The notes under the pieces were generated by a model, which saw only the letters and a program-made list of their open reading frames with translations, searched no databases and was not told the DNA's origin. A stretch of 56,762 nucleotides of DNA, filler included, from Dugesia japonica (lineage: Eukaryota), in assembly GCA_001938525.1 (NCBI GenBank). It is 6 parts of 6 records of this genome, joined end to end, with 100 filler letters (N's around TTAATTAATTAA, not from the genome) between each part and the next. Parts side by side here need not be neighbours in the genome. Positions count along the whole stretch, not along the records: positions 1 to 10,656 come from MQRL01360226.1; 5 more parts are not named here. The stretch is one strand, 5' to 3'. This document shows, in pieces, positions 1-55,390 of the stretch. Position 1 is the first letter of the stretch. The number at the start of each line of letters is the position of its first letter. The position numbers and the translations under genes are program-made.

Positions 1-2373
1 TTTTTCATTATTATTATTGGTTATCATTATTGATTATTATTATTGATTATTATTGCTTATTTATTATTATTGATTATTATTAGTATTATTATTGATTTTT
101 TTTTTCATATGTTGATTATTATTATGATTACCATATTTTTTAGTAATCAGATTTTATTAAGTAAAAAGTTATTTTTAAATAAAAGTATTAGCAAAAGATA
201 TTTGGTAAGTTGAAAGTTGTAAATTCTTTTAAGGTCAAGCAGGAATGTAGTTGATAAGGTTCAAATTTAAGTACATAAACAACATAATGTAAGATATGAA
301 CCATTATTCTCTATTGTTGGAATTCATTCTCAATAACGAAACCATGTAATAATGCATAAGTGATAGTCAATAGGTTGATTTTCCTTACAATGTAATTAAT
401 AATTAGGTATTTTAAAGAAAAAAAAACCAAGTAGCAAGCAAAGATTAAAACAAATAATGAAGGATTTTATGCAAAAGGATATCTATATTTCATGAGATTC
501 AAATATTATTTTCATGTTGAAACCTATATTGAACTGAAATTGTAATGGACTTAATTCTTTATCCAAAAAAATAAACCATGAGTTATTATTATCATTTTAA
601 CCTTAATACATAAATATAAAGAAAATAAAGAGAAATCCAGCAAAATAAGCGGAAATGGAGCAAAACAGACCAAATTAGTGTAAATGGGACAAAATTGGGG
701 AAACTGTGTAAATTCTAACCAGTTATTCATTAACCTTTCAAATCAATTAATTTATTCATTTAAATATTTTATTTAATTAATTAGTTTAATCTTCACTGAA
801 CTTTTTATTCAATCAAAGCAAAATTTTAAATTCAATACATTAAGAAATTATACTACACGAATGAAAATTGTAATATCTTAATAAAAAACAAAAAATTGTC
901 CTATTTTGATTAATTACAATTATCCTTATTTATTTTAGTATTTACTAAATGTGAAACCATAAATTGTAAAGGTTTTTTCCTCTTTATAATTAAATNNNNN
1001 NNNNNNNNNNNNNNNNNNNNNNNNNNNNNNNNNNNNNNNAAGCATCTATTTACGAGAAAGCTTAAATTTTCACTTCTTATTTATTTATTTTAATTAACTA
1101 ATTAATTAATTTTTTAGAAATTATAAAACCCATTTCGGAAAGTAAATTTAAAAATCTAAAGAAACTGTCACAAAATTAGAATCCAGAAAGATATTGGAGC
1201 AAAGTCTATGATTGTTTTGTATTAGATATTAAATCTATATTCAAAGTTTATAACAATAATATAGAAAAAAGAATTTGGTTATGCTAAAAACACAAGTTTG
1301 TAATCCTCAATCAAATAATTTGATATTTCATTGAAATTCAAGAGGAAATGATAAGATCTGAATAAATATTAGTCATCACATAAATACAAGAGAAATAGAG
1401 GAAAAATACGGTATAATATATGAAAATTGGGNAAAATGCACCAAAATAGTAAATGGGGTAAAAACCGGGCAAAACAGTATAAATATAGTAAAATGGTTAA
1501 AAGAGTGAGCTTAAGAGATAAATATTAAAACTTTTATCTAATAAAGTATTATATAATCAATTAAAAACTATAAAAATAAAGTGTATAATGAGACTCTTTG
1601 AACGATTATTAAACAAAAGAATTACTTTTCCACAAAACAAAAACTATAAACATCGCTATTTGCTTATTCAAACAAATTAAAATTCTATGCTTAGTTGGAA
1701 ATTTTAATCTTTTAATTTATTAAAATTTAAAATAAAATTCTCATTTTATCATTTAAACTTTTTAGTATTATCGAAAATTTTAAAATTCTTTTGGCCTGAG
1801 AAAATATCAAAAAGCTTTTACGAATGAATTTTTCTGCAGTCCTCTGTCTTTATTGTATCTTTTGGCATAGTTGAACTTACTTTCAATTGTCAAATTAATG
1901 ATGTCAAATTTTCAGCTCTTGTAATTCTTGGTTTAGGTTATTTTATTATTTTATTATTTCTTTAAAGTTTGATCGCTCCACTTCGGTACGTAATGCTTAG
2001 TCACAAAATCATCTATGAGAATGACTTCTCGTCATTTTTAAACAATTTGTGAGTATTACTATAATTAACTCTGATTTGGATTTGTAAATTTTTGACATTT
2101 TATTTTAATTTGATCCCTTTGTGTGTTTTTTTGCAACTTTTTCATAGTACCCATTTATTCACACTTGAAGTTTTAAAAAAATTGTTTTTACATTTATATG
2201 TACATTATAATAATACTAAATTCTGTTAGATATGTTAAGCATTCATTTAAGCTTAAATTTGAATTTATTACCTTTTTCAAATTTTATGTTATTGTCGGGT
2301 TTCTACGATTTTGATGTTTTAATTAGCTTTCACCTTATAATTTAATTCACATTTATTTTTTCCTTTTCATCAA

Positions 2374-2469
2374 TCTAGGGACATACCTACAAACTANNNN
2401 NNNNNNNNNNNNNNNNGTGATATGCTCCTCATTTCTCGGGTTTAGCACGACTTTGCGATATCGCGTCTT
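2374..2469 (+). ncRNA. Conserved structured motif of the coiled-coil cassette family, copy B (partly N-masked)
   Basis: TCTAGGGACATACCTA...ATGCTCCT...GTTTAG-CACGA-CTTTGCGATA-TCGCGTCTT aligns with 9961-10058 (-), 34596-34702 (-) and 39408-39508 (+). Strand is chosen by analogy with the G-U wobble pattern of the other copies. Confidence 0.5.
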
Positions 2470-2599
2470 ACTCTCTGATGTTATGAACCACATTAACGAT
2501 TTCGCTCAGAAATTATTCTCCACAAACATTAATTAAATCACAAACACGGTCATATTTTGTCAATAAATAAAATCACGATATTTGATAAAACAATAAGCT

Positions 2600-3330
2600 A
2601 GGAGTCAATATATTGCAGATGAATTAAAATAAAGTTGACGATTATTTTGGTTTTGGCCTTAAACTTTTGGTTTCCCGCTCCAGGATAGCAGCTGTAAACC
2701 ACTATTTTTCCTCGTTTCTTAATTGTGCGGAGCTCTCATAAGACTTCCCTATCAATCCATTTCAAATATGACGTTTTATAATAAAGGAATCAATTTATAA
2801 TTTTACGACACTCCAATAGTTTTCATTCTGGCATTAAGCATTTTAAGCATTAAAATTTTCAATCTTCTACTCGATCTCATTTTCTCAGCATTAACCTTCT
2901 TTGCTCTCACTTTAGCAGTATTTACGTTTTGCGCTCTTGTTTAGCTTCGTTAATTTTCTTGATCTCATTCAGGAGTCTTAACTTTTCCTACTCATTTTTA
3001 ACAATAAGAATTCTGACCAACCTTATTTTAGCAACGTTAAGTATGCTCAACTCATTGGTGCAACATTAATTTTTCTCTCATTTTCGTTTGGAGTTAACAC
3101 ATTAATTTTCTCTTGTTTTCATTTGGATTTCAGCAATAATTTTCTTTGCCTTTATCAACAATAATTTTCTCTCTGCGTTTCACATAATTACTTTCATAAC
3201 AATTTTACCAATTTTTAATCTCGATTTTCATAATTACATTTAGAAAAACTTTACCAATTTCTCTTTCTTATTCGCATAATTATTTTCATAACAATTTTGC
3301 CAATTTCTGTTTTAATCACTAATATGAACA
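2600..3330 (-). pseudogene. Decayed Lys/Glu-rich coiled-coil-like ORF beside cassette motif copy B
   Basis: Minus strand gives broken K/E/I/N-rich stretches (REKINV repeats, EKLRLLNEIKKINEAKQERK) built from degenerate ATTAATTTTCTCT repeats. It sits in the same position relative to the motif as the coiled-coil ORFs of other copies. Confidence 0.3.
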
Positions 3331-4479
3331 CGATCCTGGCTTCGGTGTCACTCGGATTATATATATAAATAAAAATCGTTAAAATTGGTATTGAAAATTA
3401 ATGGTAGTTTATTGTCTCTCAACCGGCTTTTATTATTCTCGTTATTGATGAAATCGACCAATCATTATCCTCTCATTGGCTAGTTCTTCTTGTGGCCTTT
3501 ATTGATGCATATGTACGCTACTGTTAGCACACCATTCATACACAGCATGTATCGTTTTGCTGTTCATTCACGGCTTCTCGGATGTTCTTGATTAACAGCC
3601 AATTTAGATTTTCCAAAATCGTGTCNNNNNNNNNNNNNNNNNNNNNNNNNNNNNNNNNNNNNNNNNNNNNNNNNNNNNNNNNNNNNNNNNNNNNNNNNNN
3701 NNNNNNNNNNNNNTAATTAAATGATAATAATAATATTAAACGCTATTTAGAATTATTTATAATATGAAATAGAGTCGTAGAGACTCTTTTAATATAATAT
3801 TATAATATTTTATATTACTTTTGTTATCAGTAACATCATTTCTTTCGCATATTTTAAAAAAATTTTCTTCTTTCAAATTAGGGATCCTCTACGCCTTCGT
3901 TTTCTTCCGAATTCATAAAATAATTTCATAACAATTATACTCATAATAATATAATACTAATGAAAACAATAATACTAATAGTAATTAATCTTTCTGGTCT
4001 AACACAGTTTATTTTCTCTAATTCGCTCTGAAATCTTTTCGTCGTTTGCCGGCTCTCGTGTTCTAGTCTAACATTTTTCTTTATAAAATTATAATTTTAT
4101 TTACATTTTATGGTTTGACCCTTATTAATACTACATTCTAATATTATACTTTTTAATTGATCCATGAACATCTTTATTTATAATACATAATATTTTATAT
4201 ATAACCAATATTTTACTTAATTAGCTCTTTGCCATAATATGAAATATTTAATTTATTTTTAGACAATTTCCTTATTGTTTACTCCATGTACACTAAATCA
4301 ATCAATAACTAATTACATAAAACAAATGTCAGAATAATGAAAATAATAATTATTACATACGGAATTTAATAAAATAAAAAATCAGTAATATATAAAATTA
4401 AGTTGAAAATTAAGTCTTTGTGTACATAATTTTAAGGATTTTCTATGGTTTTATTAGTGTTTTATGGTTAGAATTGTCT

Positions 4480-6100
4480 ACGTTCTTATAGAATTATACA
4501 GAATATTTTAGGGTTAATGTAAAACTTTACATTCAGTCATATAAGTTTCTAAACCAATACATAAAAACTATAATCCATCACATTAAAGTTGAATTTAATC
4601 ACACAAAATTTCTGAGTTAACTCATGAAAATTTATAAAATCAACAATTAAAGATATAATCCATCACACAAAATATTTACTCGACTCATGAAAACTAAAAC
4701 TAAACACAAAACTTTCATAGAAGACATAAAAATGTTTCAAAAACTATATAGAAGTAATCGATAACTTCCAAAATTCTCAAAACATTACATAGACGTCAAT
4801 AAAAACTTTACAAAGATATACTAAAAGTCAATTGAAGTCTTCAAAGATTACATAGAAGTCGTTAAAATTATCATTCATCACACTAAAATTTCATTCCATC
4901 ATATAAAAATACAATTCGTCAAACAAAAATTACTTTTTCATCATATGAAATTATAACTCATTGACTAAAATTAGACAGAAGTCATTAATAAGTTTAATAA
5001 ATTACAAAGAAGTCAATAAAATGTTTATGTCAACACAAAAATGCTAACCAACTATATAAATTAATAACCCATCGCATTGAACCTTTTAAATCAATACTTT
5101 AAATAATCCAGGCATTAAAATTACATTTTATTATACAAATTCTTTGACAACTCATAAAACTTATACATCAACACATCATTTCTAGTTTGTCACATAAAAT
5201 TTCTTAGTCAACACATAAAAGTAATAACCCAAAAGTTAAACTTATAATCTGTCACATTGAAATTTTTAAGTCAACGCTTCAAAATTTTAATCCCTCTCAT
5301 AAACATCTAATTCAACGCATAAAAGTTAACACTCAACAAATAAATTTTCTAAGATAACACATAAAAGTTATAATCCATCACACGAAAAATAGAGTTAATC
5401 ACAATGACATTTCTAAGTCATCGCTTTAAAACTATAATCCGTACACTAAAATTATATTCCGTTACATAAAATATATAAGCCAAAACATCAAAGTATAATA
5501 CATTTCACAAAAGTCTAATTTTAACCCATATAAATTAACGCTCAACAAGTAAAACTCAAAGTTTTACGCATAAAATTTATTAGTCAACACATAAAAATTA
5601 TAATCCATCACACTAAAATTACACTCTATCTCACCAAATTTCATTCAATCACAGTATAGTTCTAAGTAGTCACATAAAATGTTTAATCCAATACATAAAA
5701 ATTATAATTATTTGTGCTAAAGTTATACAGAAGTCATAAATTATTTAAAAATACATTTAAGTCAATAAAAAATTTCTATTAAAACGTTTTATAAATTACA
5801 CAGAAGTATTCAACAATTTTCAAAGATTACATAGAAGATAATAAAATCTCTAAGTCATCAGATAAAATTTTAAACCAACTAGTTAAACTTATAATCCATC
5901 ACACTAAAATATAGTTCATCACATTAAATTTCTAAGTCAACATGTAAAATATAATATTCATTATTGAAAATAAACACTTCAACATGTAAAATAATCACTT
6001 TGTCATAGAAAATTATAGTTTTATCACAAAACATAGACACTTCATCATAGAATATACATGTATCATCATGTTATATACNCGAGTCATCATAAACATTTAG
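4480..6100. repeat. Degenerate ~21-22 bp minisatellite array
   Basis: Recurring units ATAATCCATCACACTAAAAT, (TCTA)AGTCAACACATAAAA and TACATAGAAGTCAATAAA throughout the interval. Confidence 0.8.
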
Positions 6101-6179
6101 AGACAATTACAAAAAAAAGTATAGAACTCGTCATTGAAAATACAACTTTCACCATAAACCCTAAATTCATAAGATTTTA

Positions 6180-6440
6180 AGAGAAGAATCTGTCAATTTA
6201 AAATTTAATAAGAATCAAATTTTATCACCTTAAAATTTATTAGAATCAAAATTTAACAATTTAAAATTATTACAAATTAAAATTTATCAGTTTGAAATTA
6301 ATACAAATCAAAATTAAACAGTTTATAATTATCAAATTTAAAGTTCATAAGTTTTAAATTCTTAAGTTTAAAATTTATCGGCTTATAATGAATAGAATTT
6401 TAAATTTTTAATCTCAGATTATAGTTTTTTAAATTTATCA
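6180..6440. repeat. Degenerate ~21 bp AT-rich tandem repeat (TTAAAATTTATCA-type units)
   Basis: Repeated AAAATTTA...AGAATCAAAATTT units. Confidence 0.55.
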
Positions 6441-7400
6441 ACTTATTAATTACTTTTATTTTATAATTAATTCTTGTTTAATCATATTAATTAAAATATA
6501 GTTGATAATTATTATTTAACATTTGTTTTATATTTCAATTTTAAATATGACGAACACTTATTATTTAAAATTAAAAGTTAAAAGTAAGATTTATTTTATT
6601 TGTTGTTGTTAATTAACATTTGTATTTAGACATTTTGAACCATTATAATATGCAGAAGAGTTTTAATATGTTAAATAAACAGAGGAATTTATTAAAATTA
6701 TATTAATTTTATTATGTCAAATGAAAATTATAATTTAAAATCAAGTATCAATTTATTTCACAAATTAATTTATAAGTCACTCATTTGTAAAGTTTAGATT
6801 TTTGATTTAAATTAATGTTTTAATTAAATAATAATACAAATAATATATTGATTTCATTAATTATATTAAGACAGAATAATTTTACTTAAACATATAAATA
6901 TTAACAATGATTGTCATCAGATGAGCAGTTAATATTAATGAGCCAAGAATCATCGAATGTCGATAGAATGAGCCATTGAACATCTAATATTATAAAATTT
7001 GAAACAACTTTTTGTATGATCCATTGAACATCTATTAGTATGAAACCTGAGCAACTAATGTTAATATTGCCAGGGGAATATTTAATACTGATATTGCATT
7101 GGGAATATTTAATTTTAATATTGATCAGGGAATATTTAATATTAATGTTAATATTTCCCGGCTCTGCTAATGTTAAGGTTACTCTGAAAAAATAAACTTT
7201 TATAAAAAAGAAGAAAAAATCATTAATTTGACTTAATTTAAACAAAATTAAACAATTTCATTTCAATTAAACAAAATACCACTAAAATTATTTAATTAAA
7301 ACAACAAATAAATAATTCCATTTAATTTAAACAAATAATAAATAATTTGACCTCATTTAAACAAGAAATCAAGAAAATACATTGACTAAAACAAACGTAC

Positions 7401-7490
7401 GGATTACACAATCGTTGCGCAATCATGATGTGATCATTATGTAACTATGATATAATCGTTACATAACCATGGAAGTGTTGCGTAATCAAA
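7401..7490. promoter_or_regulatory. 11-bp-phased array of C/EBP/PAR-bZIP-like sites followed by a CCAAT box
   Basis: TTACACAA 7404, TTGCGCAA 7415, TGATGTGA 7426, TTATGTAA 7437, TGATATAA 7448, TTACATAA 7459, TTGCGTAA 7478; GACCAATCA near 7504. Confidence 0.45.
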
Positions 7491-8741
7491 TCACAAAAAT
7501 TTCGACCAATCAAAACGTTTAAAACCGGGCACAGTTGACCTTTAAAAAACTTGGGGACTTACTGTGCCCATGCTGAACTATCTATTTACTTAGTTTAATT
7601 GAAATATAATCCGCAGTATTACTTACTGCCACAAAAATTTATTTATGTCGGTGGTGACTAAGGTTTTTAACTCACCAAAATAATTTCCACAGAACAAGAA
7701 ATATTTTTGGATCTACAATATTAATATAAATTTATGGGAACAGTTACTACTCTACTTTTTATCTAGGAGCGAGAATTAATATCAAAATAATCAGACTGAA
7801 CCACAGATTTATCAAATTATATAAAAGAAAATGCACTAGATTATTAATTACTTTAAAAAGGAGTACTTGCAGTCTCTAATCTGGCCTAAAACTACCTATA
7901 CATCACCCAAAGTATTTGCATCGAAAAATGCTTCAACTCACCACAAAATTTATGTCAGTATGACCCCATCCTACACCCCTGATGACGACTGATTTGGATG
8001 AAAATTTATTGTTAGATGTAAAATTAAACAGTAAAATAGGAATGTCTCATAAACCTATTTCCTAAAATTTATCCTTCCCTGTTAAAATGTAATGTTATAA
8101 TTGTCGAAAATTCAGTGTCCGCAAGACGGTAGAGTTATATGGGAGCTCGGTGAATAAAATAAATTCTATATATGATTTCTGCTACTTTATATGGTCTGAT
8201 TTTTATAAATTATTTTTTTTTTTCGTGGTTACAAGTTATAAATATAAATTCTTTTTTAAGTAATTATCTTTATTTAATTTCATCTAGATAAAACTTCATA
8301 TTCTTATAAGGTGTAAAGTATCAAATATTGTTGATCATATCTATTTTTCATTAATTTTTCTTGAATGATCAACCAGCGTTATAATTGAGATTTTCTGAAT
8401 TGGCACCTAATCATTAATGATTAAAGACGAAATTTTTTCGTGGTTTTATAATTCAATAATCGGATCTTTAGTTGTTCTAATAAAACGAATAATTTAAGTA
8501 TAGTCGATTAATAGTAGGGACATCTTCTGAGAATTCCGGAAGATGGTGAACGAGCAAAGATGGTGGTATCCAGCTGACATCTTTTCTAGTTCACCCTCTA
8601 GGAATAAGGACGAAAAACAGATAGGCTGCAGGCCGAAGAAAAATCTGTGGTTTATGCTTAGTTTATTTTAATTTGTTAATTGAAAATACATGTATTATTA
8701 GTGGTGGAAAATCAAAAAATTGTTAATTTTTTTAACAGAAA

Positions 8742-9173
8742 ATGACCACGTTTTTCAAGGCACATATTCACTTGGTGCTCTCCAATGGCGGCGATGAAAG
8801 TACGTTTTGGATCCCCTGGCGAAATGCAGTTGAGCTGCTGAACGATCAAAAAGCCGCTTACGAGAAGGAGAAAAGGGAGATGCAAGTGGGTCAGCAGGAG
8901 TTAATAAAACGCCACATCGAGTTACGGTGGCAATGGAAAATAATTAATGCGGAGAAGGAGAAGTTTGAGATGAAATTGACACAGCGAGAGTCGAAAATAC
9001 AGGAAATTGCCAACGAATTCTCAACGGCAACTCAGCATCTAATGGAGCATCGATTCGTTATGGAGAAGATCGAAGTGAAGATCCTGGAGCAGCTGATGGA
9101 CAACTCGGGAGCTGTGACCGATGTCCAAGATCCTGTGATTGTAAAAACAGAGTCATTAAGCAACGTCCAATAA
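8742..9173 (+). CDS. Cassette ORF-A, coiled-coil protein (copy A)
   Basis: 143 aa, GC-enriched against the flanks, heptad E/K/Q-rich. Preceded by the TTTTAACAG acceptor, with AATAAA overlapping the stop. C-terminus EKIEVKILEQLM..VIVKTE resembles NKIEVVLQQIL..YIITE at 33686-33883. Confidence 0.7.
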   Translation: MTTFFKAHIHLVLSNGGDESTFWIPWRNAVELLNDQKAAYEKEKREMQVGQQELIKRHIELRWQWKIINAEKEKFEMKLTQRESKIQEIANEFSTATQHLMEHRFVMEKIEVKILEQLMDNSGAVTDVQDPVIVKTESLSNVQ

Positions 9174-9477
9174 ATGTTTCAATATGTACCAGAGTTTTTG
9201 TTATTGATTTAATTATTTAATGTGATATGTATGTCATATTGAGAGTAAAGCATATTTCTGTTGACCACAGAAGCAGTCATAAATTTAATGCGTTTGATTG
9301 ATCATTGTTTTTATTCGGTGTAATAGCACAAAATTGGGACCAATGTTTAATTCAATGCCTATTAAATAATTCTAGGTCTCGGACAATCAAATCAACTCAT
9401 AATATTTATTGTCTTTAATTATTTATATTCATGTAGTCGGTTGAAGATATTGCAATTGATTTTCGTCTTATTATTTA

Positions 9478-9798
9478 GTGAACAAATTCCTTGATAAGAA
9501 ATTATTAAAACGAGATGTAGTTGCAGCGCAGCAAAGGTGGAAGGAGGAGAGGCGCGATTTGCGTAACGAAATCCTACAGTTCAAGGGCCACTTAAATCGA
9601 TCATCATCGAAATATGCTCAATTAAAAGAAAAAGAGTTGGCATTACAACATGCCAACCGCCTTATGGCCGACATCATCAAGATTTTTGCAGATCGCGAGG
9701 CGACGATGTTCCTCACTTTGCGGATGTTGTGGTTAAATTACCGGTCCCCTAAGGAATCGACCGAAGCCATGGAGCAGACCGTGGATCTTGACGCCTAA
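9478..9798 (+). CDS. Cassette ORF-B, coiled-coil protein (copy A; probable terminal exon)
   Basis: KELALQHANRLMADIIKIFADRE motif shared with 34151, 39642 and 54281. The called GTG start is a TTTAG|TG acceptor; AATAAA near 9825. Confidence 0.75.
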   Translation: MNKFLDKKLLKRDVVAAQQRWKEERRDLRNEILQFKGHLNRSSSKYAQLKEKELALQHANRLMADIIKIFADREATMFLTLRMLWLNYRSPKESTEAMEQTVDLDA

Positions 9799-9960
9799 TC
9801 ACAAATGAGGCCATGTTTATAGCCAAATAAATGTTAATGTTTGTGTCTAGAGTATCTTGATTTTCGTTAAAAGTTTAGTTGTGGAAGTAAAATTATTGTA
9901 ATAACCTTTTACTGAGCATAAAAAGAATAATTGCTGTCCGGGCTCACAGATTTAATGAGC

Positions 9961-10058
9961 AAGACGCGATACCGCAAAGTCGCGCTGAACACGTGGAAAA
10001 AGGGGCATGTCACTGAGGTTACATAAATACTTGTGGTTTTTAGGTATGCCCCTAGACA
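9961..10058 (-). ncRNA. Conserved structured motif of the cassette, copy A
   Basis: Minus strand has outer stem AGGGGCAT/ATGCCCCT and hairpin GCGCGA-CTTTGCGGTA-TCGCGT, homologous to three other copies with covariation. Confidence 0.55.
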
Positions 10059-10700
10059 TGTAAAAGAATATGTGATTAATAAAAGCGAGATCAGTGAATT
10101 CGAAAAGAAATTTTAAATCATCAAATCCTAAAAACCCAACATTTGTATTTTTCCATTTCCAATGCTTTTTTACATCCCAATATTTAAAGAATATTATTGT
10201 ATGTTTTCCACTTTTGTCAACAAATTGAGATGTTTTACCGATAGGAAACTTCATTTTGGCTGTTACATCTTGCGACACTTTACCTTTGTAATTAGTATTA
10301 ACTAACATTTTTTAATGATTTTTAATAAATGAGAGTGTATATATATACATATTTTTCAGAAATAAAATTAATTGATTCATTTAAACAAAAAAAAAGTATT
10401 ATAAACAATGCATTAAATTAAATCTATATAAGATGGAGTTGAGAAATGATGATGAGTTTATCAAATTGTTGGTCCAAGCGGTAGCGGAAAAAAACATTGT
10501 TTGTATGTAAGTTACTAAGATCACATTTATTTAAATAAAAATTAAACAAAATATATTGGCACATAGGTGCAGATAAAGAGCATGGGGTGACACAATCTAA
10601 ACTTTGCAACATGAATATGAGATTTATAAATGGATTTGATAAAAATTGAAGCAAGANNNNNNNNNNNNNNNNNNNNNNNNNNNNNNNNNNNNNNNNNNNN

Positions 10701-31496: not shown

Positions 31497-33355
31497 CCTT
31501 TTAATGAAAAATAAAATTGTTATTTATTGTAAAATTTCAAAAATATTTAATAATAATTAATTAATAATTATAAAAACAAATAATAAATAATAATAATGTT
31601 GGGCTGAAACAGCCTCAAGTAACATATGAAAATCAGAGAAAGAAACAGATAAACAGACAATAATAAAATGAATAAGAAAATAAATCAAACTATTTAAATA
31701 ATCGAAAAGGAGAATGTATAATCAAACAAGGAAAATTTATTATTATTTATAATTTATATAAAGGTGTTTAAAGTATTCATGTATTAAAAATAAAATTATA
31801 TTGATGAGAGAAAAAGAAAGATTAAAACAAATAATTATATTAAAATGTTTTGATATTATTATAGGAAAAGAAAAGCAAAATAAATCATCATAATCAATTT
31901 AAATAATAAAATAATAGATTATTAGTCAGGTTTAAGTATTATTATCTTAATTTTATAAAAAATATAAAAATGTGAAATTATTATTTTTATCGATAAATAT
32001 AATTAAAATTATTATTATTCAATAAATATTATTATTTATAATGAACCCGGAGGAATTATAACAGAAAAATTATTTGTAGAAGAAGGTCTTATGATTTTCT
32101 GTAAGAATTCAGTATTGATTTGTTCATATTTGCATGTGATTGTGTTGTTATTTTTATTTCTAAAACTCTTACAAGTTTTAGAAAATTATTTTTCTTTAAG
32201 AAAAAGATTATTTTTTTAATCATCTCCACTTGAGGAAAAAAACATAGAACATCTGTGAGCTTATAAACCGCTGCAGAATTAACAAAAAATAAAAAGAATC
32301 ACGGCCATATTTGGACATCTCTGTGGAAACTATGGGTGAGCAACGTAAGATTTCTTGCAATAGAAATCTAAAGTTGACGCCAACTGTATCTGTCAAAATT
32401 TGACGATACAATGGAGTATAAAAAAAGCATTTTTCCGAAAAATTACTCTTAAAAAATTCATTTTCAGCTCTTGTTGATTTATAGTTAAAAATCGCAAGTA
32501 GCATTTTTTATAAAACTATAACAATTCACGGAGACAAGTAATTATTTATAAATTGTTCATTATAACATAAATTATTGAGCATTATTTGAAAGGAACTGAG
32601 GCAATGTTCGTCAAAAGTTGGTCCAGCCGACTGTGACGATCGTTGTACATCAGATACCTCGAGATTGTCCACTCTAAAATTTAATAAATATGAAATATGT
32701 TATAAAATATGATGGAACAAGGGTTAATGATACTATAAGCATTGATGAGTGGTGGTTGGATTCTGTCTTTTTATTTATCTTACTTTAATATTGCGGTTGT
32801 AATTGTTGTAAAAATATCAATTCGATTTAATGAACATATCTAGACTTCTTGTTTCGATTATTAGATTGTTTCATATTGATAATGATCATGTTATAGAATA
32901 CTTATTAATATGTCACATATAATTCGCTTTATGAATATTTTATATAATTTGATGCTCATTATATGATAATAATTAAATTGATAATTAAATATTAATAGCC
33001 TTTTCATTTAAAAGTTTAACATGACAGAACGACCATTCGTCATTTGGAGAGAGGAATTTGCGTTTCTCCCAGGAATATTTTCCGAAAGAATAAACATTGG
33101 TCAGGCTGAATAAATAGAGGTTTATGATATGCATGTTTTAATAAAGTTGAAATAATATTAATCTAATGAAGATCCAACTCCATATAAAATGACGAGTGAT
33201 CGATGATCTGTTGGATTTATGGCAAATATGTGACAAGTTTAACTCGTTAAATTGATAATCAGTGGTCACTGAGTATTATTCCATTAATAATTTAATAAAT
33301 GTCTGCATTATATTTTTATATAAACCTAATCATAGAAACATTATTTCGTACTTAG

Positions 33356-33883
33356 ATGTCTCGACAGATAACTAAAACGGAAGCAGCTATGTCAACGACA
33401 GAATGGACTTTCACAACGTCTAAATGTAATAATGTGCCAGTGTTAAGGGACTCGCTTGGAATCGAAGGAGCGAATGTGGATCCCTGGTGGATTACCCAGG
33501 ATCAATTGAAAGCAAATAGCGAGGAAATTAGAGGAATGCGAGCAGAGATGGTCCAACAAAATTAACAGTAAGCGGAACAACTTCAACGGATTGATGTATT
33601 ACAAACTCGTGTTGATCAGCAGGAACAGGATTACAATCAACAGTTACTCGAAGTAACCAAATGGCAAGAAGAACGAGAAAAGTAGTTGATGACATTGCTC
33701 ATTAGAACCACCGAGCTAGCTAAGCACCAACAGCACTTGATACAAGCCATGCGCAACACTCAGATAGAGTTCGAGGAGTATGCGAAGATGTCTAAACGGT
33801 TATCAAACAAGATCGAAGTAGTGCTCCAGCAAATTCTCACCCCACTGGATAAGACTTACATCATTACCGAAACTATTGTGTGA
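33356..33883 (+). pseudogene. Cassette ORF-A homolog (copy C) with in-frame stops
   Basis: 33356-33565 and 33686-33883 share one frame, separated by stops. Q/E-rich coiled coil; CTTAG|ATG acceptor; C-terminus similar to 8742-9173. Confidence 0.65.
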
Positions 33884-34150
33884 TTGTTTATTGAAAGCAA
33901 TATAATTTTAGTTTATCAACTCTCTTCTCTTAAATTTTAGTTCATATATAAAATCCATAATGTAATAATCCATATAATATAATATAATATTATAATATAT
34001 AATAATCCATAAAGAAACTTCGGAAACAAATGCATTAATAATATAAACTATTCCGTATTATAACTTTAAGACCTGATGAAAATTACATTAATAATTGAAA
34101 AATTTAATAATCGGTTTGATAAACGAAATGATATCACTTAATTAATTATA

Positions 34151-34471
34151 GTGTCGAATGCAATAAAACTAACAACAGACACTTCGATGGCCGATCTGCG
34201 AAAGAAATGGTGCTCCCTGCACAACAAACAACAGAACGAGATCACCGAAATGCAACACAAAAACGCACAACTCCGGGAGAAAAACAGTCGACTGCAGGAA
34301 CGAGATCTGGCATTATCACAGACATGTCGCATGATGGCAGATATAAATAAAGTATATGCAAATCGGGAAGGAGTGCTAATGGCAATGGTGTGAACTCTGA
34401 CTCAGGTATCCAAGATCAAAAGGGAGCTGACCAAGGAGAAGAACAAGGAAATCATCGACTTGGACGAATGA
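34151..34471 (+). pseudogene. Cassette ORF-B homolog (copy C), one internal TGA
   Basis: RDLALSQTCRMMADINKVYANRE; reading through the TGA at 34391 ends EIIDLDE*, compared with QTVDLDA* in copy A. Confidence 0.75.
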
Positions 34472-34595
34472 AGGATTTTAAATGAAATAATGTTTTCTTA
34501 CAGAAATTGTTCTAATTGAAGTGTAAAATCCTAATTAATAATGACCAATAATATCAACGAGTGAAGAGCCAAATAAAATCGAAATTGAAAATCAC

Positions 34596-34702
34596 AGGAC
34601 AGGATACAGCATAGTCCCGCTGAATCCTGGAATAGGGGATCGTGGTGATGCGAGATATAGCATCACAAATTTCTGTGTTTACTAGGTATCATCCCTCAGA
34701 CA
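34596..34702 (-). ncRNA. Conserved structured motif, copy C
   Basis: Minus strand reads GAGGGATGATACCTAGTAAACACAGAAATTTGTGATGC..GCATCAC..ATCCCCT..GATTCA-GCGGGA-CTATGCTGTA-TCCTGT. Confidence 0.55.
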
Positions 34703-51450: not shown

Positions 51451-53570
51451 ACACACAAAAAGTTTTACTTTAATCGTTTAAAAGTTGCATTAATTACGAA
51501 GAAATCCAGTATCAAGTCTAACAATACTAAAAAGTTGTACCTTATTTGTGGAACTCAGCTATTAATCAAGTAATCAAGTTTTGATTAAACATAAAATTAT
51601 TTGTCTGGTTAAAAAGAAAGGAAAATATTCCCACAGAATAGATATTCATACGAATTTGGAAGTTAACCTCAGAAAAGAATCGCATTTAATCCGAGAAACC
51701 CGTGCAGATATCCTACTTACTTACGAAAGTAAAATTTTGTTGTTATAAATGTTGCTAAATAATCAAATTTTTATAATTTATAAATAAAAGCGTAATAAAA
51801 TTGACTAATCCTTTTTTATTTATAAGAAAATTCTGTGATAATTACATTAGAATCAATGTAGCATTAGACGCGATTTATTTGAGTGTGATATACCATTATC
51901 ATAAAATAAAAATGAACACTGGTATAATATATTTTTTTAACAAAAATTTATCNNNNNNNNNNNNNNNNNNNNNNNNNNNNNNNNNNNNNNNNNNNNNNNN
52001 NNNNNNNNNNNNNNNNNNNNNNNNNNNNNNNNNNNNNTTTTTAACATATGCTGCTAACATCTGTCCCCAATAATTCCAATTTTAGAAGTATTGCACTCTA
52101 CAATTGTCGATCAGTCTTGTATATTTCAAGTAGTAATAGCTAGAATTCGCAACAGATTTACCATTAGGCATGCAACATTATTAGTAAAGCTGCAGTGTAG
52201 TGTGTAATTTGCCGACACACATTTTGTTAATTTCGAACCTCTAACTATTTGTGAATGACTCAGTAGAGAATTATTCATTAGTCTCAGTGGGAGTGTGAAC
52301 AAATTAGCAATTTCAACACATTATATTTTATTTTTTGTTCATGACCACTCCCGGATAGACCGACAGTGATGACGAGATAAGTCTACTAATTCTATATACG
52401 AGGAGAGAAAATGGACAACCAACTATTTGTATTTCTACTCAACATCGAATTGCATTGTGATTACCCAATACAATCTCGTGGACTTTCTTTACGATAATCG
52501 GCTTTAATATGTCTGCTAAATTCACGATTTTTAATGGCACTACCATCTTCTTTGTCATTGTAACGTTTGATCATTATTAAGTACGGGATATTTGTCCAGA
52601 CTGATCCGATCATTTTACATTACTAGAATCCACTTTAATTTCTATAATTATATTCTTAATGTCTATAAGGATAATACTATGATTATTATTAAAATTAACA
52701 TAATTCATGTTACATTGGAAGGAGTATGTCTATTGCTGCTATCTATTATATATCTAATAGTATTAATATCGATATTATCATTAATACTATCCCTCAATGT
52801 ATTAATTTCTGAGGTCGTCATTCTAATTCATTTCTAATTATTAAAAAATTCTGGTCATATAGTGAATTATGGGCACGTGATACTGTAATAGTATATTTTA
52901 ATTAATGTTTTTCTGCTCCGCAAGGCCTTCTTTGAGTCCAAAAACACCTTTACGACCAACATTGTGAATAACGATTTAGTAATAGATGTCATTCCGATCC
53001 TTTGTTTATGCTTTCATCCCCAATTTTACTATTATTAAAGCTTGAGGGCACACTTCTATTTTTATAACCTTACGTCGAATGTTTAATTAAGTTCCAACTT
53101 GTTCTAGGAATTCTAGTTCAACCATGCGAGCACCAGGCAGTATGATTTGGATATTTTTTTTTGTTATATTCTGGGGACGCAAGATTGCGATTGCCTGATC
53201 ATGATTTGAATATTCATTAATTGTAGATAGTGTCATCCGGTTTGAGGAATATCCTCAAGTTAATTCGAAGACATCATAAGACAACCCGACTTAGACAACT
53301 ACTCGCTCACATACTGTCGCGTGGAAAGATAGAACATCCCGACGAAACTGATTTAGTGCCTAGATGTTCCTCTTGACGAATAATGTGAACATCGATGCTG
53401 AAAAAGAACCTCCTTAATTAAAAGATCTATCTCCGACGTTTTAGTGAATTTGTTAAACTAAATTTTATCTGGACTGATTTTTTTTATTCGTGTAATTACA
53501 ATTCTCTTTTAATAGATTGTTTCTCTTTTATTAATGCTTTGAATTTAATTTGTTATAGGACATTAGAGAA

Positions 53571-53997
53571 AATGGAATTTAAATGGGAAACCATATATGA
53601 CAGACGTACCAGCTGGATAGTTTTTAAAAGGTACAAGAACTCCCATGACTGGGACATGAGTGTGCTGGCCGATTACTCAAATTTATCTGCAGAAGAAGCC
53701 GAGGACAAACGAGAATGGGACGCTGCCGAGCGGAGCGCATACTATGAGTGTGACGGCCGCGACCGGTCACGGGAAGTGTATCATTTGGCTAGCGCGTTCC
53801 CTCCAATTCATAATGAAGAGATCGCCACCATCAGTGAATGGCGCGAAGGGCCTTCAATGATTCCTGTATCCACAGCTCATCTGCCACCTCGAGTCAGTTT
53901 AAGTGTCTCTATTAGTGATACCCTTTGGGACTTAAGGAATTCAGAGGTCGTTAATAATAACGAAAACACCGATACGGTAACTGATAACAGTACTTGA
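53571..53997 (+). CDS. Cassette E first ORF, unknown acidic protein
   Basis: GC-enriched open frame; TTATAG acceptor near 53558, ATG near 53572. Confidence 0.6.
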
Positions 53998-54280
53998 TTT
54001 TGATTATTGCATCGAAAATTGGTGTTCACTGTAATGAATTATATACATCTTGTGTTTGATTTCTTATCTTAATTACATTTCTTCCATTCGGTTAGAGGTA
54101 AAATACACACGTCATAATAGAAAGGTTTTGTTCGTTTAGAGGAGTTAAAATTAGCTCAGGAATTTTCTGGTTCGTGTTCATAGTCTATAATTCGGTAAAA
54201 GTTAGGTGAGTCAGATATTATTTCATAAATTAGTTATAATTCAAAAGGATTGATTTTGTAACTGTTGATTTTCGTTTATA

Positions 54281-54640
54281 GTGCACTCGTCCTTAAATCG
54301 TTCCTCCGCTCCGATGAAAAAGATGCGCGAATCGAGTGAGTACCAAGAAATGACTTGGGACCTCTATTGTCTCGCCAAGCGGCGATGGGAGGCCGATACT
54401 GCTGCGGTAGAGGCCAAAGTAAAGAGATATAAAGCCAAATGTGTCGCGTTCAGGAAGGAAGCTAAAGCGTCACATGGTCAAGAAAGAATATGGAAGACCC
54501 AGATAGAGTCTTTCAACGACGTGATCCGGTCCTACCAAGACCGAGAGAATAAACTGGTTAACAATATTCTAAAGTTGAAAACGGTCATGCCACTCAAACC
54601 TCTGATGGTGGACAAAGCGACTCAGACATCCCGTTCATGA
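54281..54640 (+). CDS. Cassette ORF-B distant homolog (copy E) with C-terminal KATQT motif
   Basis: KRRWE...FNDVIRSYQDRE aligns with RWKE...MADIIKIFADRE; TTTATAG|TG acceptor; AATAAA near 54669. Confidence 0.65.
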   Translation: MHSSLNRSSAPMKKMRESSEYQEMTWDLYCLAKRRWEADTAAVEAKVKRYKAKCVAFRKEAKASHGQERIWKTQIESFNDVIRSYQDRENKLVNNILKLKTVMPLKPLMVDKATQTSRS

Positions 54641-54777
54641 TCTTCGTTGTTCATACTTTGAATTGGTGAATAAAAGTTTCGATTGTAACATCTTGTCTTA
54701 ATTCTAAGGATTATTTTCTTTTTATAAATAGTCTTGAATTAAAAGTTAAGCTCTATTTTACTAACGTTATTCATTTA

Positions 54778-55140
54778 GTGACACGAATTACATTCCCAAA
54801 CAGCTTAAAGCGCTGTCATAGAATAATCCGGCGACTTCTGTTAGAACGCCAGCTCAAACGCCAGAACAAACGTGCCTTGCTCAAACACCTCGCACAGCGC
54901 AACAAGTTAATAAAAAAGACGGGCATCATTGTTAAAAAGCCGGGAGACCTAGCGGAACAAACAAAATTACTCCTCGAAAATAAAATCGAATTTTTAAAAT
55001 GATACATTGCGGATCTATTCCTCCAGCTAGGCAACACGTCGTGGTTACAATGGGATGATAATGATGATAATGCTGTATTTGATTTTATTCCAGAAGAGCC
55101 TACCCAGTGGTTAGACCCGTGTGCTNTCAACGAAATGTGA
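54778..55140 (+). pseudogene. Cassette E third ORF, basic/coiled-coil N-terminus and acidic-aromatic tail, one internal TGA
   Basis: TTTAG|TG acceptor; the frame continues past the TGA at 55000 as YIADLFLQLGNTSWLQWDDNDDNAVFDFIPEEPTQWLDP. Confidence 0.5.
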
Positions 55141-55236
55141 TTTGTAAATTAATACATATTAATAGTAACCTTTTGACTATTTATTTGATGACTATAGTAA
55201 TAGGGAAATAAATACGAACCCAAACTAAAGATGTAC

Positions 55237-55390
55237 GAGTGTGAACCTCAAGTAAGCATTAGAGGTCAACCGCTCTGCACTGAATATCTAATCTAGGGAC
55301 ATTAGATTTAAATTCTTGAAAGGGTACCCCTAAGGACCGTTTTTTCCCCGGTCAGTATACTTTTCAACATCAACTCAGGTAGAACCCCAA
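55237..55390. ncRNA. Diverged, expanded version of the cassette structured motif (copy E)
   Basis: Hairpin ACCTC-AAGTAAGCATTA-GAGGT, then CACTGAA and AGGTA...CCCC, in the same order as in copies A, C and D read on the ORF strand. Confidence 0.35.

What the first reader, a model, noticed from the sequence alone, without database searches (positions are those of the whole stretch)
8500..10060. Dispersed, unannotated multi-ORF coiled-coil cassette family (5 copies on 4 unrelated contigs)
Seen: the same architecture recurs at 8500-10060 (+), 33020-34702 (+), 39408-40350 (-), 53539-55390 (+) and, decayed, 2374-3330 (-). It consists of short GC-enriched coiled-coil ORFs followed by a conserved ~100-nt motif. 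ORF-B shares MADIIKIFADRE / MADINKVYANRE / MAEIIKDYDDRE / FNDVIRSYQDRE, an upstream Trp and ELAL/DLAL/ELTL. The ORFs are only recognisable as relatives at protein level, so these are old subfamilies. No transposase, RT, Rep or capsid motif is visible in any copy. Inference: five copies in about 57 kb of unrelated contigs implies very high genomic copy number, so this is likely an undescribed mobile element, the accessory module of a giant retro/DNA element, or an endogenous virus-like unit.
Basis: partly seen in the sequence, partly recalled or inferred. Interest (0 to 1): 0.9.

Follow-up and report, generated by a model that had tools for sequence, protein, structure and literature searches.

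The report
Two-ORF repeat unit with RNA hairpin
A 1.6-kb unit in very AT-rich eukaryote-like DNA encodes two small all-helical proteins with no named relatives, followed by an RNA hairpin kept by compensatory changes in five short contigs from four public samples (source organisms unknown); it is a real orphan family, but nothing shows it is a virus or a transposon.

Summary
The cassette is real, and its bounds are about 8515-10141 (+). It has four parts:
- a 5' block;
- ORF-A (143 aa);
- ORF-B (106 aa);
- a 185-nt 3' block.

Coding is supported by GC at codon positions of .52/.27/.58 and .50/.31/.56, against flanks of 14-29% GC.

ORF-B belongs to a true but tiny family. It has six unnamed public relatives on contigs under 2.3 kb, with E-values down to 1e-30. 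Four of those contigs show the same order: ORF-A slot, spacer, ORF-B, AATAAA, hairpin. Hairpin 1 (9962-9986) pairs in 48 of 48 cells. Two of its pairs show double compensatory changes.

The "decayed copy" is really a 0.46-kb form without ORFs at 2293-2751 (-). It keeps only the two end blocks. The flanks outside both copies are unrelated.

I found no reverse transcriptase, transposase, capsid, terminal repeats, target-site duplication, Rfam family or viral relative. Synonymous sites are saturated between all copies, while proteins are conserved.

I favour an old, DNA-propagated, gene-like multicopy family (0.45) over a non-autonomous mobile unit (0.38).

The parts
8476..8514 (+). Possible promoter-proximal segment with a TATA-like AATAAAA about 35 nt before the 5' block (weak)
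   Evidence: MAFFT alignment with copy 2 shows a shared ATAAAACG and about 60% identity. The local alignment test did not find this significant. This is inference only.
8515..8581 (+). 5' block, the conserved non-coding start of the unit
   Evidence: 49 of 68 columns identical to 2751-2684 (-). The score is 99, against shuffles of 33 +/- 4. It folds strongly in this copy (z -3.5) but not in copy 2 (z -0.8). It is not conserved in L001-L006.
8582..8741 (+). Remainder of the leader. It is AT-rich and intron-like, and ends in a 3' splice-site-like AG (8737-8738) three bases before the ORF-A ATG.
   Evidence: Read from the sequence. L002, L003 and L004 have an AG immediately before their ORF-A ATG. 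Similarity between those loci starts only about 9 nt before the ATG.
8742..9173 (+). ORF-A, 143 aa: a single long helix (residues 19-122) with a disordered tail
   Evidence: GC by codon position is .52/.27/.58. It has no Pfam, PDB or database relatives. It occupies the same slot as the 150-153 aa ORFs of L002-L004 but is not detectably homologous to them.
9169..9174 (+). AATAAA overlapping the ORF-A stop codon
   Evidence: Read from the sequence.
9175..9477 (+). AT-rich spacer (GC 0.27) that ends in a pyrimidine-rich tract and an AG (9477-9478)
   Evidence: Equivalent spacers of 200-310 nt occur in L002, L003, L004 and L006.
9478..9798 (+). ORF-B, 106 codons counted from GTG 9478 (the frame opens at 9460). 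The first in-frame ATG is codon 63. The model is one helix (residues 3-88) with an acidic tail.
   Evidence: There are six public relatives, with E-values from 1e-30 to 1e-8. The N-terminal part before codon 63 is conserved (57% identity to P0001 over the full length), so it is translated. In five of seven loci the codon that aligns with the Met of L005 and L006 is GTG, and its G is the G of an AG.
9826..9831 (+). AATAAA 28 nt after the ORF-B stop
   Evidence: An AATAAA lies within 60 nt of the ORF-B stop in all seven loci.
9957..10141 (+). 3' block, the conserved non-coding end of the unit
   Evidence: The covariance model R1 finds only the known copies. There is no Rfam family.
9962..9986 (+). 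Hairpin 1: an 8-bp stem with one bulged A and an 8-nt loop. This is the most conserved part of the whole family.
   Evidence: 48 of 48 cells pair in six copies. Two pairs show changes on both sides, and one of those has three pair types. Slid controls pair in 29-44% of cells. It is 29/29 identical between L002 and L003, whose ORF-B DNA is 75% identical.
10030..10057 (+). Second conserved stretch of the 3' block, shared with copy 2 and L006
   Evidence: Alignments A5 and A7. The structure here is not supported: the L006 fold has z +0.2.
2293..2751 (-). Short form of the unit without ORFs. It has a 5' block (2684-2751), about 210 nt that cannot be aligned, and a 3' block (2293-2473, with hairpin 1 at 2444-2468). 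It contains a masked N run, which I left as it is.
   Evidence: The flanks outside both ends are unrelated to the flanks of copy 1.

Best explanation
It is one member of an old family of small, self-contained, gene-like transcription units, present in several copies per genome in a few unidentified AT-rich eukaryotes.

SHOWN
- The order of parts is conserved: 5' block, ORF-A slot, AT-rich spacer, ORF-B, AATAAA, and about 95-135 nt later a covarying hairpin.
- Both proteins are single long helices with short tails.
- Purifying selection acts on the proteins.
- Stronger nucleotide-level selection acts on hairpin 1.

INFERRED
- A promoter just upstream of 8515 drives one primary transcript.
- Each ORF is brought next to a leader by splicing (cis or spliced-leader) at the AG just before it.
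- In most members the leader's last base completes the ORF-B start codon.
- Each message ends at its own AATAAA.
- The two helical proteins act together as a pair or oligomer.
- The hairpin works in cis as RNA on read-through transcript, as a processing or termination signal or as a protein-binding site.
- Copies spread as DNA (duplication), because promoter-proximal sequence, splice sites and intron-like spacers travel with them.

On this reading each intact copy is kept by selection on the host or on the family itself. The short form without ORFs shows that the end blocks can persist without the proteins.
For: - The ORF-B family is real.
- The same architecture occurs in L002, L003, L004 and L006.
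- An AG lies 0-3 nt before the ORF-A ATG in all four loci that carry it. An AG also lies at or just before the ORF-B start in all seven loci.
- AATAAA follows ORF-B in all seven loci.
- Spacers and untranslated regions are AT-rich and not conserved, while the ORFs and hairpin are.
- The proportion of synonymous differences is 0.72-1.07 and of non-synonymous differences 0.16-0.49 for every pair. This includes L002 and L003, which come from one sequencing run.
- GC at third codon positions is 0.47-0.64 in all loci, whatever the flank GC.
- Hairpin covariation is clear.
- No mobility or viral hallmark was found.
Against: - There are no transcript data, so the transcription start, splice junctions, poly(A) sites and the way ORF-B starts are all inferred.
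- No conserved donor that would supply the missing base was found.
- The unit has sharp ends and unrelated flanks. It also has a short form that keeps exactly the two ends. This is the classic look of a non-autonomous mobile element.
If those contigs are a fair sample, that means a copy number unusual for a host family.
- The unit sits in gene-poor, satellite-rich DNA.
- The window's ORF-A has no detectable relative, so the "A slot" is conserved by position only.
Confidence: 0.45

Rival explanations
1. It is a non-autonomous mobile unit whose two end blocks are the cis signals used by an enzyme encoded elsewhere. On this reading the full form carries two accessory helical proteins and the 0.46-kb form carries none. 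It could move through RNA, with the 3' hairpin as the recognition site for a partner reverse transcriptase, as in ORF1-only LINE derivatives. It could equally move as DNA.
For: - Homology has defined ends at about 8515 and 10141, and the flanks are unrelated.
- The short form keeps both end blocks and loses the interior.
- The two copies lie in opposite orientation in repeat-rich DNA.
- The 3' hairpin is the most conserved part.
- There are at least two diverged lineages per sample in SRR20852515 and ERZ27292660.
- The L002, L003 and L004 contigs all stop inside hairpin 1, as happens at an assembly-graph junction in shared sequence.
- GC content jumps sharply against the flanks.
- L006 runs into an A-rich stretch and then (AAT)n-like sequence about 230 nt after the hairpin.
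Against: - I found no convincing target-site duplication. There are no terminal inverted or long terminal repeats. Neither window copy has a poly(A) or microsatellite tail where homology ends.
- No enzyme gene lies in 10.6 kb or on any related contig.
- Two internal AATAAA signals lie upstream of the 3' block.
- Intron-like spacers, splice sites and possibly upstream promoter sequence are retained, which argues against copying through RNA.
- The short form keeps the 5' end, unlike 5'-truncated LINE copies.
- The ORFs match no ORF1 or Gag family.
- All pairs are saturated at synonymous sites, and no young copies were seen.
- Only one or two ORF-B proteins per public sample turned up in a 15-billion-protein collection.
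Confidence: 0.38
2. It is an accessory module inside a much larger element (a giant LTR or Penelope-like element), or an endogenous virus-derived unit.
For: - The proteins are orphans and the composition differs from the flanks.
- The surroundings are repeat-rich.
- The piece is only 10.6 kb, so a larger element could reach beyond it.
Against: - No reverse transcriptase, integrase, protease or capsid domain was found in any stop-free piece of 45 aa or more that I scanned.
- There are no long direct repeats or hammerhead-type RNA.
- Neither ORF-A nor ORF-B has a relative in IMG/VR, and the motif is absent there too.
- The two copies in this piece share nothing beyond the unit's own ends. That would not be expected if both sat in the same place within a larger repeated element.
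Confidence: 0.07
3. The resemblance among copies is only generic coiled-coil similarity and chance.
For: - The window's ORF-A matches nothing.
- Pfam and PDB give only sub-threshold hits to coiled-coil proteins.
- Two of the four first database hits (P0002, P0004) were spurious tandem-repeat proteins.
Against: - ORF-B matches P0001 at E 1e-30 with 57% identity over its full length.
- Ten columns are invariant in seven sequences.
- The gene order is shared, and the hairpin covaries.
Confidence: 0.02

Closest known systems
ORF1-only non-LTR retroelements (HAL1 'half-L1'; Drosophila HeT-A). Comparison from general knowledge, not from a tool hit.
   Same: - Multicopy units that encode only small structural, helix-rich proteins and no reverse transcriptase.
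- They depend on a conserved 3' region.
   Different: - No homology to ORF1p or Gag families.
- No poly(A) or other tail, and no target-site duplication.
- Splice sites and intron-like spacers are retained.
- Internal AATAAA signals lie before the 3' block.
- The short copy keeps its 5' end.
Spliced-leader-resolved operons of nematodes, flatworms and others. That flatworm leaders can supply a start codon comes from PMC9851317.
   Same: - Two short cistrons on one strand.
- The upstream gene's AATAAA is followed 200-310 nt later by a 3' splice site placed at the downstream gene's start.
- The ORF-A ATG lies 0-3 nt after an AG.
- The ORF-B start codon seems to need a base from an upstream exon.
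   Different: - No transcript evidence.
- The source organism is unknown.
- A leader ending in AUG would be out of frame with ORF-B.
- The unit is multicopy and carries a conserved downstream hairpin, which is not an operon feature.
Non-autonomous deletion derivatives of transposable elements (MITE-like DNA elements; Dictyostelium TRE5-A deletion forms that keep the 5' and 3' modules). Comparison from general knowledge.
   Same: A full form and a short form share only the two end blocks.
   Different: - No terminal inverted repeats, target-site duplication or transposase.
- The full form has no enzyme either.
Replication-dependent histone gene 3' stem-loop. This is a functional analogy only.
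   Same: A multicopy gene family with a short 3' hairpin that is conserved more strictly than the coding DNA.
   Different: - Different sequence and size.
- It lies about 95-135 nt beyond a conserved AATAAA, rather than replacing it.
- It gives no Rfam match.

Membership tests
ORF1-only non-LTR retroelement (HAL1 / HeT-A type) | The ORF is homologous to LINE ORF1p or Gag | tested here: not met
   No Pfam family reaches threshold for ORF-A, ORF-B or their relatives. PDB profile searches give only generic helices.
ORF1-only non-LTR retroelement (HAL1 / HeT-A type) | A poly(A) or simple-repeat tail at the 3' end, and target-site duplications | tested here: not met
   Homology ends at 10141 and 2293 with no tail. 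Only chance-size direct repeats of 8-9 nt flank the unit. The (AAT)n-like run in L006 about 230 nt downstream is ambiguous.
ORF1-only non-LTR retroelement (HAL1 / HeT-A type) | A partner element with reverse transcriptase shares the 3' region | not testable with these tools
   This needs the whole assembly. None lies in this piece.
DNA transposon with internally deleted derivatives | Terminal inverted repeats and target-site duplication | tested here: not met
   The ends do not form an inverted repeat. The two ends are not complementary. No target-site duplication was found.
DNA transposon with internally deleted derivatives | A short derivative keeps both ends | tested here: met
   Both end blocks are present in 2293-2751 (-), and the interior is absent.
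DNA transposon with internally deleted derivatives | Transposase in the full-length form | tested here: not met
Spliced-leader operon | The upstream cistron's poly(A) signal is followed closely by the downstream cistron's 3' splice site | tested here: met
   This holds at sequence level only, in the window, L002, L003, L004 and L006.
Spliced-leader operon | A leader is present on the mature mRNAs, and the organism trans-splices | not testable with these tools
   There are no transcript data, and the source organism is unknown.
Giant retroelement accessory module / endogenous viral element | Linked reverse transcriptase, integrase, capsid or other viral genes, and long terminal repeats | tested here: not met
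   The test is limited to 10.6 kb.
Any described RNA family (Rfam 15) | A covariance-model match to the 3' block or the 5' block | tested here: not met
   No hits at E<=1 over the whole window. Scans at E<=10 on the motif and E<=5 on the loci gave only chance-level hits.
Coiled-coil protein | Heptad periodicity of core residues | tested here: inconclusive
   The AlphaFold2 models show long single helices. A crude a/d enrichment test was not above shuffles. No dedicated coiled-coil predictor was available.

The most novel reading that the evidence does not exclude
It is a previously undescribed kind of selfish or non-autonomous unit. On this reading two small helical proteins and a covarying RNA hairpin form a self-recognising protein-RNA pair. 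Copies persist and spread in several eukaryote lineages without any enzyme of their own, and end-only short forms ride along.
Probability: 0.25. Interest if true: 0.75.

Novelty: new variant of a known kind. Interest (0 to 1): 0.5.

Why it matters
The family has no name, no Pfam domain and no Rfam model. Even so, it shows three independent marks of function:
- its gene order is conserved;
- its proteins are under purifying selection at saturating divergence;
- its RNA hairpin is kept by compensatory changes.

That makes it a concrete, testable protein-plus-RNA module in poorly known AT-rich eukaryotes. If it is a host family, it is an unknown conserved cell component with an unusual way of starting ORF-B. 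If it is mobile, it widens the range of enzyme-less elements. Either way, annotation pipelines currently miss it.

Tried and rejected
SEARCHES THAT FOUND NOTHING
- Single-sequence word searches for ORF-A and ORF-B.
- Exact-gene look-ups.
- The motif and ORF-B in IMG/VR, JGI metagenomes and GTDB genomes. ORF-A was searched in IMG/VR only.
- Rfam, tRNA scan, and Foldseek of the ORF-B helix against PDB.
- Run and assembly accessions in the literature, so the source organisms stay unknown.

IDEAS TESTED AND DROPPED
- ORF-A and ORF-B as paralogues: hhalign probability 0.2%.
- The 3' block as coding on the minus strand. ORF 9952-10308 overlaps it, but the two copies differ by indels that are not multiples of three, and the stem covaries.
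- The 3' block as a hammerhead, spliced-leader RNA gene or Helitron end. The core positions, the donor position and the end of homology do not fit (read).
- A conserved 5' structure: present in copy 1 only.
- A panhandle between the two ends.
- A cis splice from inside ORF-A into ORF-B: no conserved phase-1 donor.
Full report
**What is in the window.**
The piece (1-10656) is extremely AT-rich. GC is 14-29% over most of it, and 40-42% between about 8500 and 10060. It looks like eukaryotic, repeat-rich, gene-poor DNA, with several tandem arrays. It has no tRNA and no Rfam match at E<=1. Nothing suggests a human contig. Inside the GC-rich stretch lie ORF-A (8742-9173, 143 aa) and ORF-B (9478-9798, 106 codons from a GTG). 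GC by codon position is .52/.27/.58 for ORF-A and .50/.31/.56 for ORF-B. The spacer between them is 27% GC. Both ORFs are therefore coding.

**The proteins.**
Neither ORF reaches any Pfam threshold, and neither has a PDB relative. The only matches are sub-threshold hits to coiled-coil families. AlphaFold2 gives one long helix in each:
- ORF-B: residues 3-88, mean pLDDT 86, predicted with a seven-sequence alignment.
- ORF-A: residues 19-122, pLDDT 84.5.

Each helix is followed by a short low-confidence tail. Foldseek against PDB returned nothing. My crude heptad test was not above shuffles. "Long helix" is therefore shown, and "coiled coil" is only likely.

**Relatives.**
Word-based searches with the single ORFs found nothing. 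The exhaustive phmmer search with ORF-B found P0001 (E 1e-30, 57% identity) and P0003. It also found two repetitive proteins that I regard as spurious. A profile search added P0005 to P0008. All six real relatives are unnamed singletons on contigs of 0.5-2.2 kb:
- L001, from ERZ27272684;
- L002 and L003, from SRR20852515;
- L004, from SRR13496040;
- L005 and L006, from ERZ27292660.

Ten alignment columns are invariant. ORF-B similarity is therefore real, not generic.

L002, L003 and L004 also carry a 150-153 aa ORF upstream of ORF-B. These three are clearly related to each other (49-59% identity to L003). L006 carries a diverged fragment in the same place. The window's ORF-A sits in the same slot but is not detectably related to them. 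ORF-A and ORF-B are not paralogues.

**Gene-like signals.**
- In L002, L003 and L004 an AG preceded by a pyrimidine-rich tract lies immediately before the ORF-A ATG. In the window it lies three bases before.
- Similarity between those loci starts only about 9 nt before the ATG.
- ORF-B in the window has no in-frame ATG until codon 63. Its N-terminal part is nevertheless conserved.
- In the window and in L001-L004, the codon that aligns with the initiator Met of L005 and L006 is GTG. Its G is the last base of such an AG.
- The simplest reading is that splicing to an upstream exon ending in A creates the AUG. I could not find a conserved donor for this, either upstream or inside ORF-A.
- A leader ending in AUG, as described for flatworms in PMC9851317, would be out of frame with ORF-B.
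- AATAAA overlaps the ORF-A stop in the window. It also lies within 60 nt after the ORF-B stop in all seven loci.
- I built no joined exon model. The ORFs were searched separately.

**The 3' block.**
Hairpin 1 begins about 95-135 nt after the second AATAAA. In the window it spans 9962-9986. Its stem letters differ between the window, L002-L004 and L006, but all 48 cells pair. Two pairs have changes on both sides, and one of those has three pair types. Slid controls pair in only 29-44% of cells. It is the best-conserved DNA of the family:
- 29/29 identical between L002 and L003, whose ORF-B DNA is 75% identical;
- 86-88% identical between the window and L004 or L006.

Three contigs (L002-L004) end inside it, as expected at an assembly-graph junction in shared sequence. 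A second conserved stretch (10030-10057) is shared with L006 and with copy 2, but a common structure there is not supported. The + strand folds better than shuffles (z -3.6) and the - strand less so (z -1.6). No Rfam family matches.

**The second site in this piece.**
- 2751-2684 (-) matches 8515-8581: 49 of 68 identical, score 99 against 33 +/- 4 for shuffles.
- 2473-2293 (-) matches 9957-10141: 121 of 190 identical, score 194 against 31.5 +/- 4.8.

The roughly 210 nt between these blocks, and everything outside them, is unrelated. No trace of either ORF is detectable. The unit therefore has defined ends at about 8515 and 10141, and it exists in a 1.63-kb form and a 0.46-kb form without ORFs. 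A TATA-like motif about 35 nt upstream of the 5' block in both copies is suggestive but not significant. The strong fold of the 5' block in copy 1 is not kept in copy 2. The 5' block is not conserved in the public loci. The two ends are not complementary.

**Age and selection.**
For every pair of ORF-B or ORF-A sequences, synonymous differences are saturated (0.72-1.07) while non-synonymous differences are 0.16-0.49. This includes the two copies from one run. GC at third codon positions stays at 0.47-0.64 in all loci, although flank GC ranges from 0.21 to 0.36.

**Mobility and virus hallmarks.**
None was found:
- no terminal inverted or long direct repeats;
- no convincing target-site duplication;
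- no tail at the end of homology;
- no enzyme or capsid domain in 13 scanned pieces;
- no relatives in IMG/VR, JGI metagenomes or prokaryote genomes.

**Weighing the explanations.**
Two observations fit a non-autonomous mobile unit. One is the short form that keeps both ends.

Four observations fit an old, selected, DNA-duplicated gene-like family equally well or better:
- splice sites, spacers and poly(A) signals are retained;
- divergence is saturated, yet the ORFs are intact;
- few copies were recovered per public sample;
- every mobility hallmark is absent.

At such divergence only constrained segments stay alignable. "Sharp ends" therefore need not mark insertion boundaries. I put the gene-like family at 0.45, the mobile unit at 0.38, a module of a larger or viral element at 0.07, and chance at 0.02. 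The remainder is unassigned.

**Verdict.**
This is a real, unannotated, orphan two-ORF unit with a covarying RNA hairpin. The mobile-element interpretation is possible but unproven, and the giant-element and virus readings have no support. Interest is moderate (0.5).

Noticed in passing
window 4510-6050: A degenerate array of about 1.5 kb built from 21-nt units with a 62-63-nt higher order. It is strongly strand-asymmetric (GC skew down to -0.47, AT skew +0.18). It lies between the two copies of the unit.
   Followed up: partly
window 6194-6360, 7062-7146, 7214-7369: Three further short tandem arrays, with periods of 31/62, 27 and 30/60 nt, lie upstream of the cassette.
   Followed up: no
They are unrelated to the cassette.
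   Followed up: partly
window 7-130 and 3919-3985; L002 1-94; L004 1-223 and 547-740; L006 1180-1255: (ATT)n/(AAT)n-type microsatellite lies near the unit in the window and in three public loci. In L006 it follows an A-rich stretch downstream of the 3' block. It may simply be common in these genomes.
   Followed up: partly
window 7395-7570: A cluster of small palindromes and a perfect 9-bp inverted repeat (7527-7535 / 7561-7569, 25 nt apart) lies in a locally GC-richer stretch about 1 kb upstream of the unit.
   Followed up: no
window 9952-10308 (-): A 118-aa ORF on the opposite strand overlaps the 3' block. The overlapping part is not coding, because the two copies differ there by frame-breaking indels. 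The N-terminal 75 residues (10080-10308) have no Pfam match and remain unexplained.
   Followed up: partly
window 653-703 and 1449-1484: Two short G-rich stretches of 23-24 nt are about 75% alike. They are probably a chance match or an old repeat.
   Followed up: no
P0002 (1344 aa) and P0004 (595 aa): Two proteins made of perfect tandem repeats scored E 1e-7 and 2e-4 against ORF-B residues 59-99. I treated them as spurious and did not examine them further.
   Followed up: no
L002 400-713, L003 1-370, L004 740-1043: The 250-300 nt upstream of ORF-A in these loci look G/T-rich and C-poor by eye, with many ATG triplets. They are not conserved in sequence. This would fit an intron or outron that is removed before translation.
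   Followed up: partly
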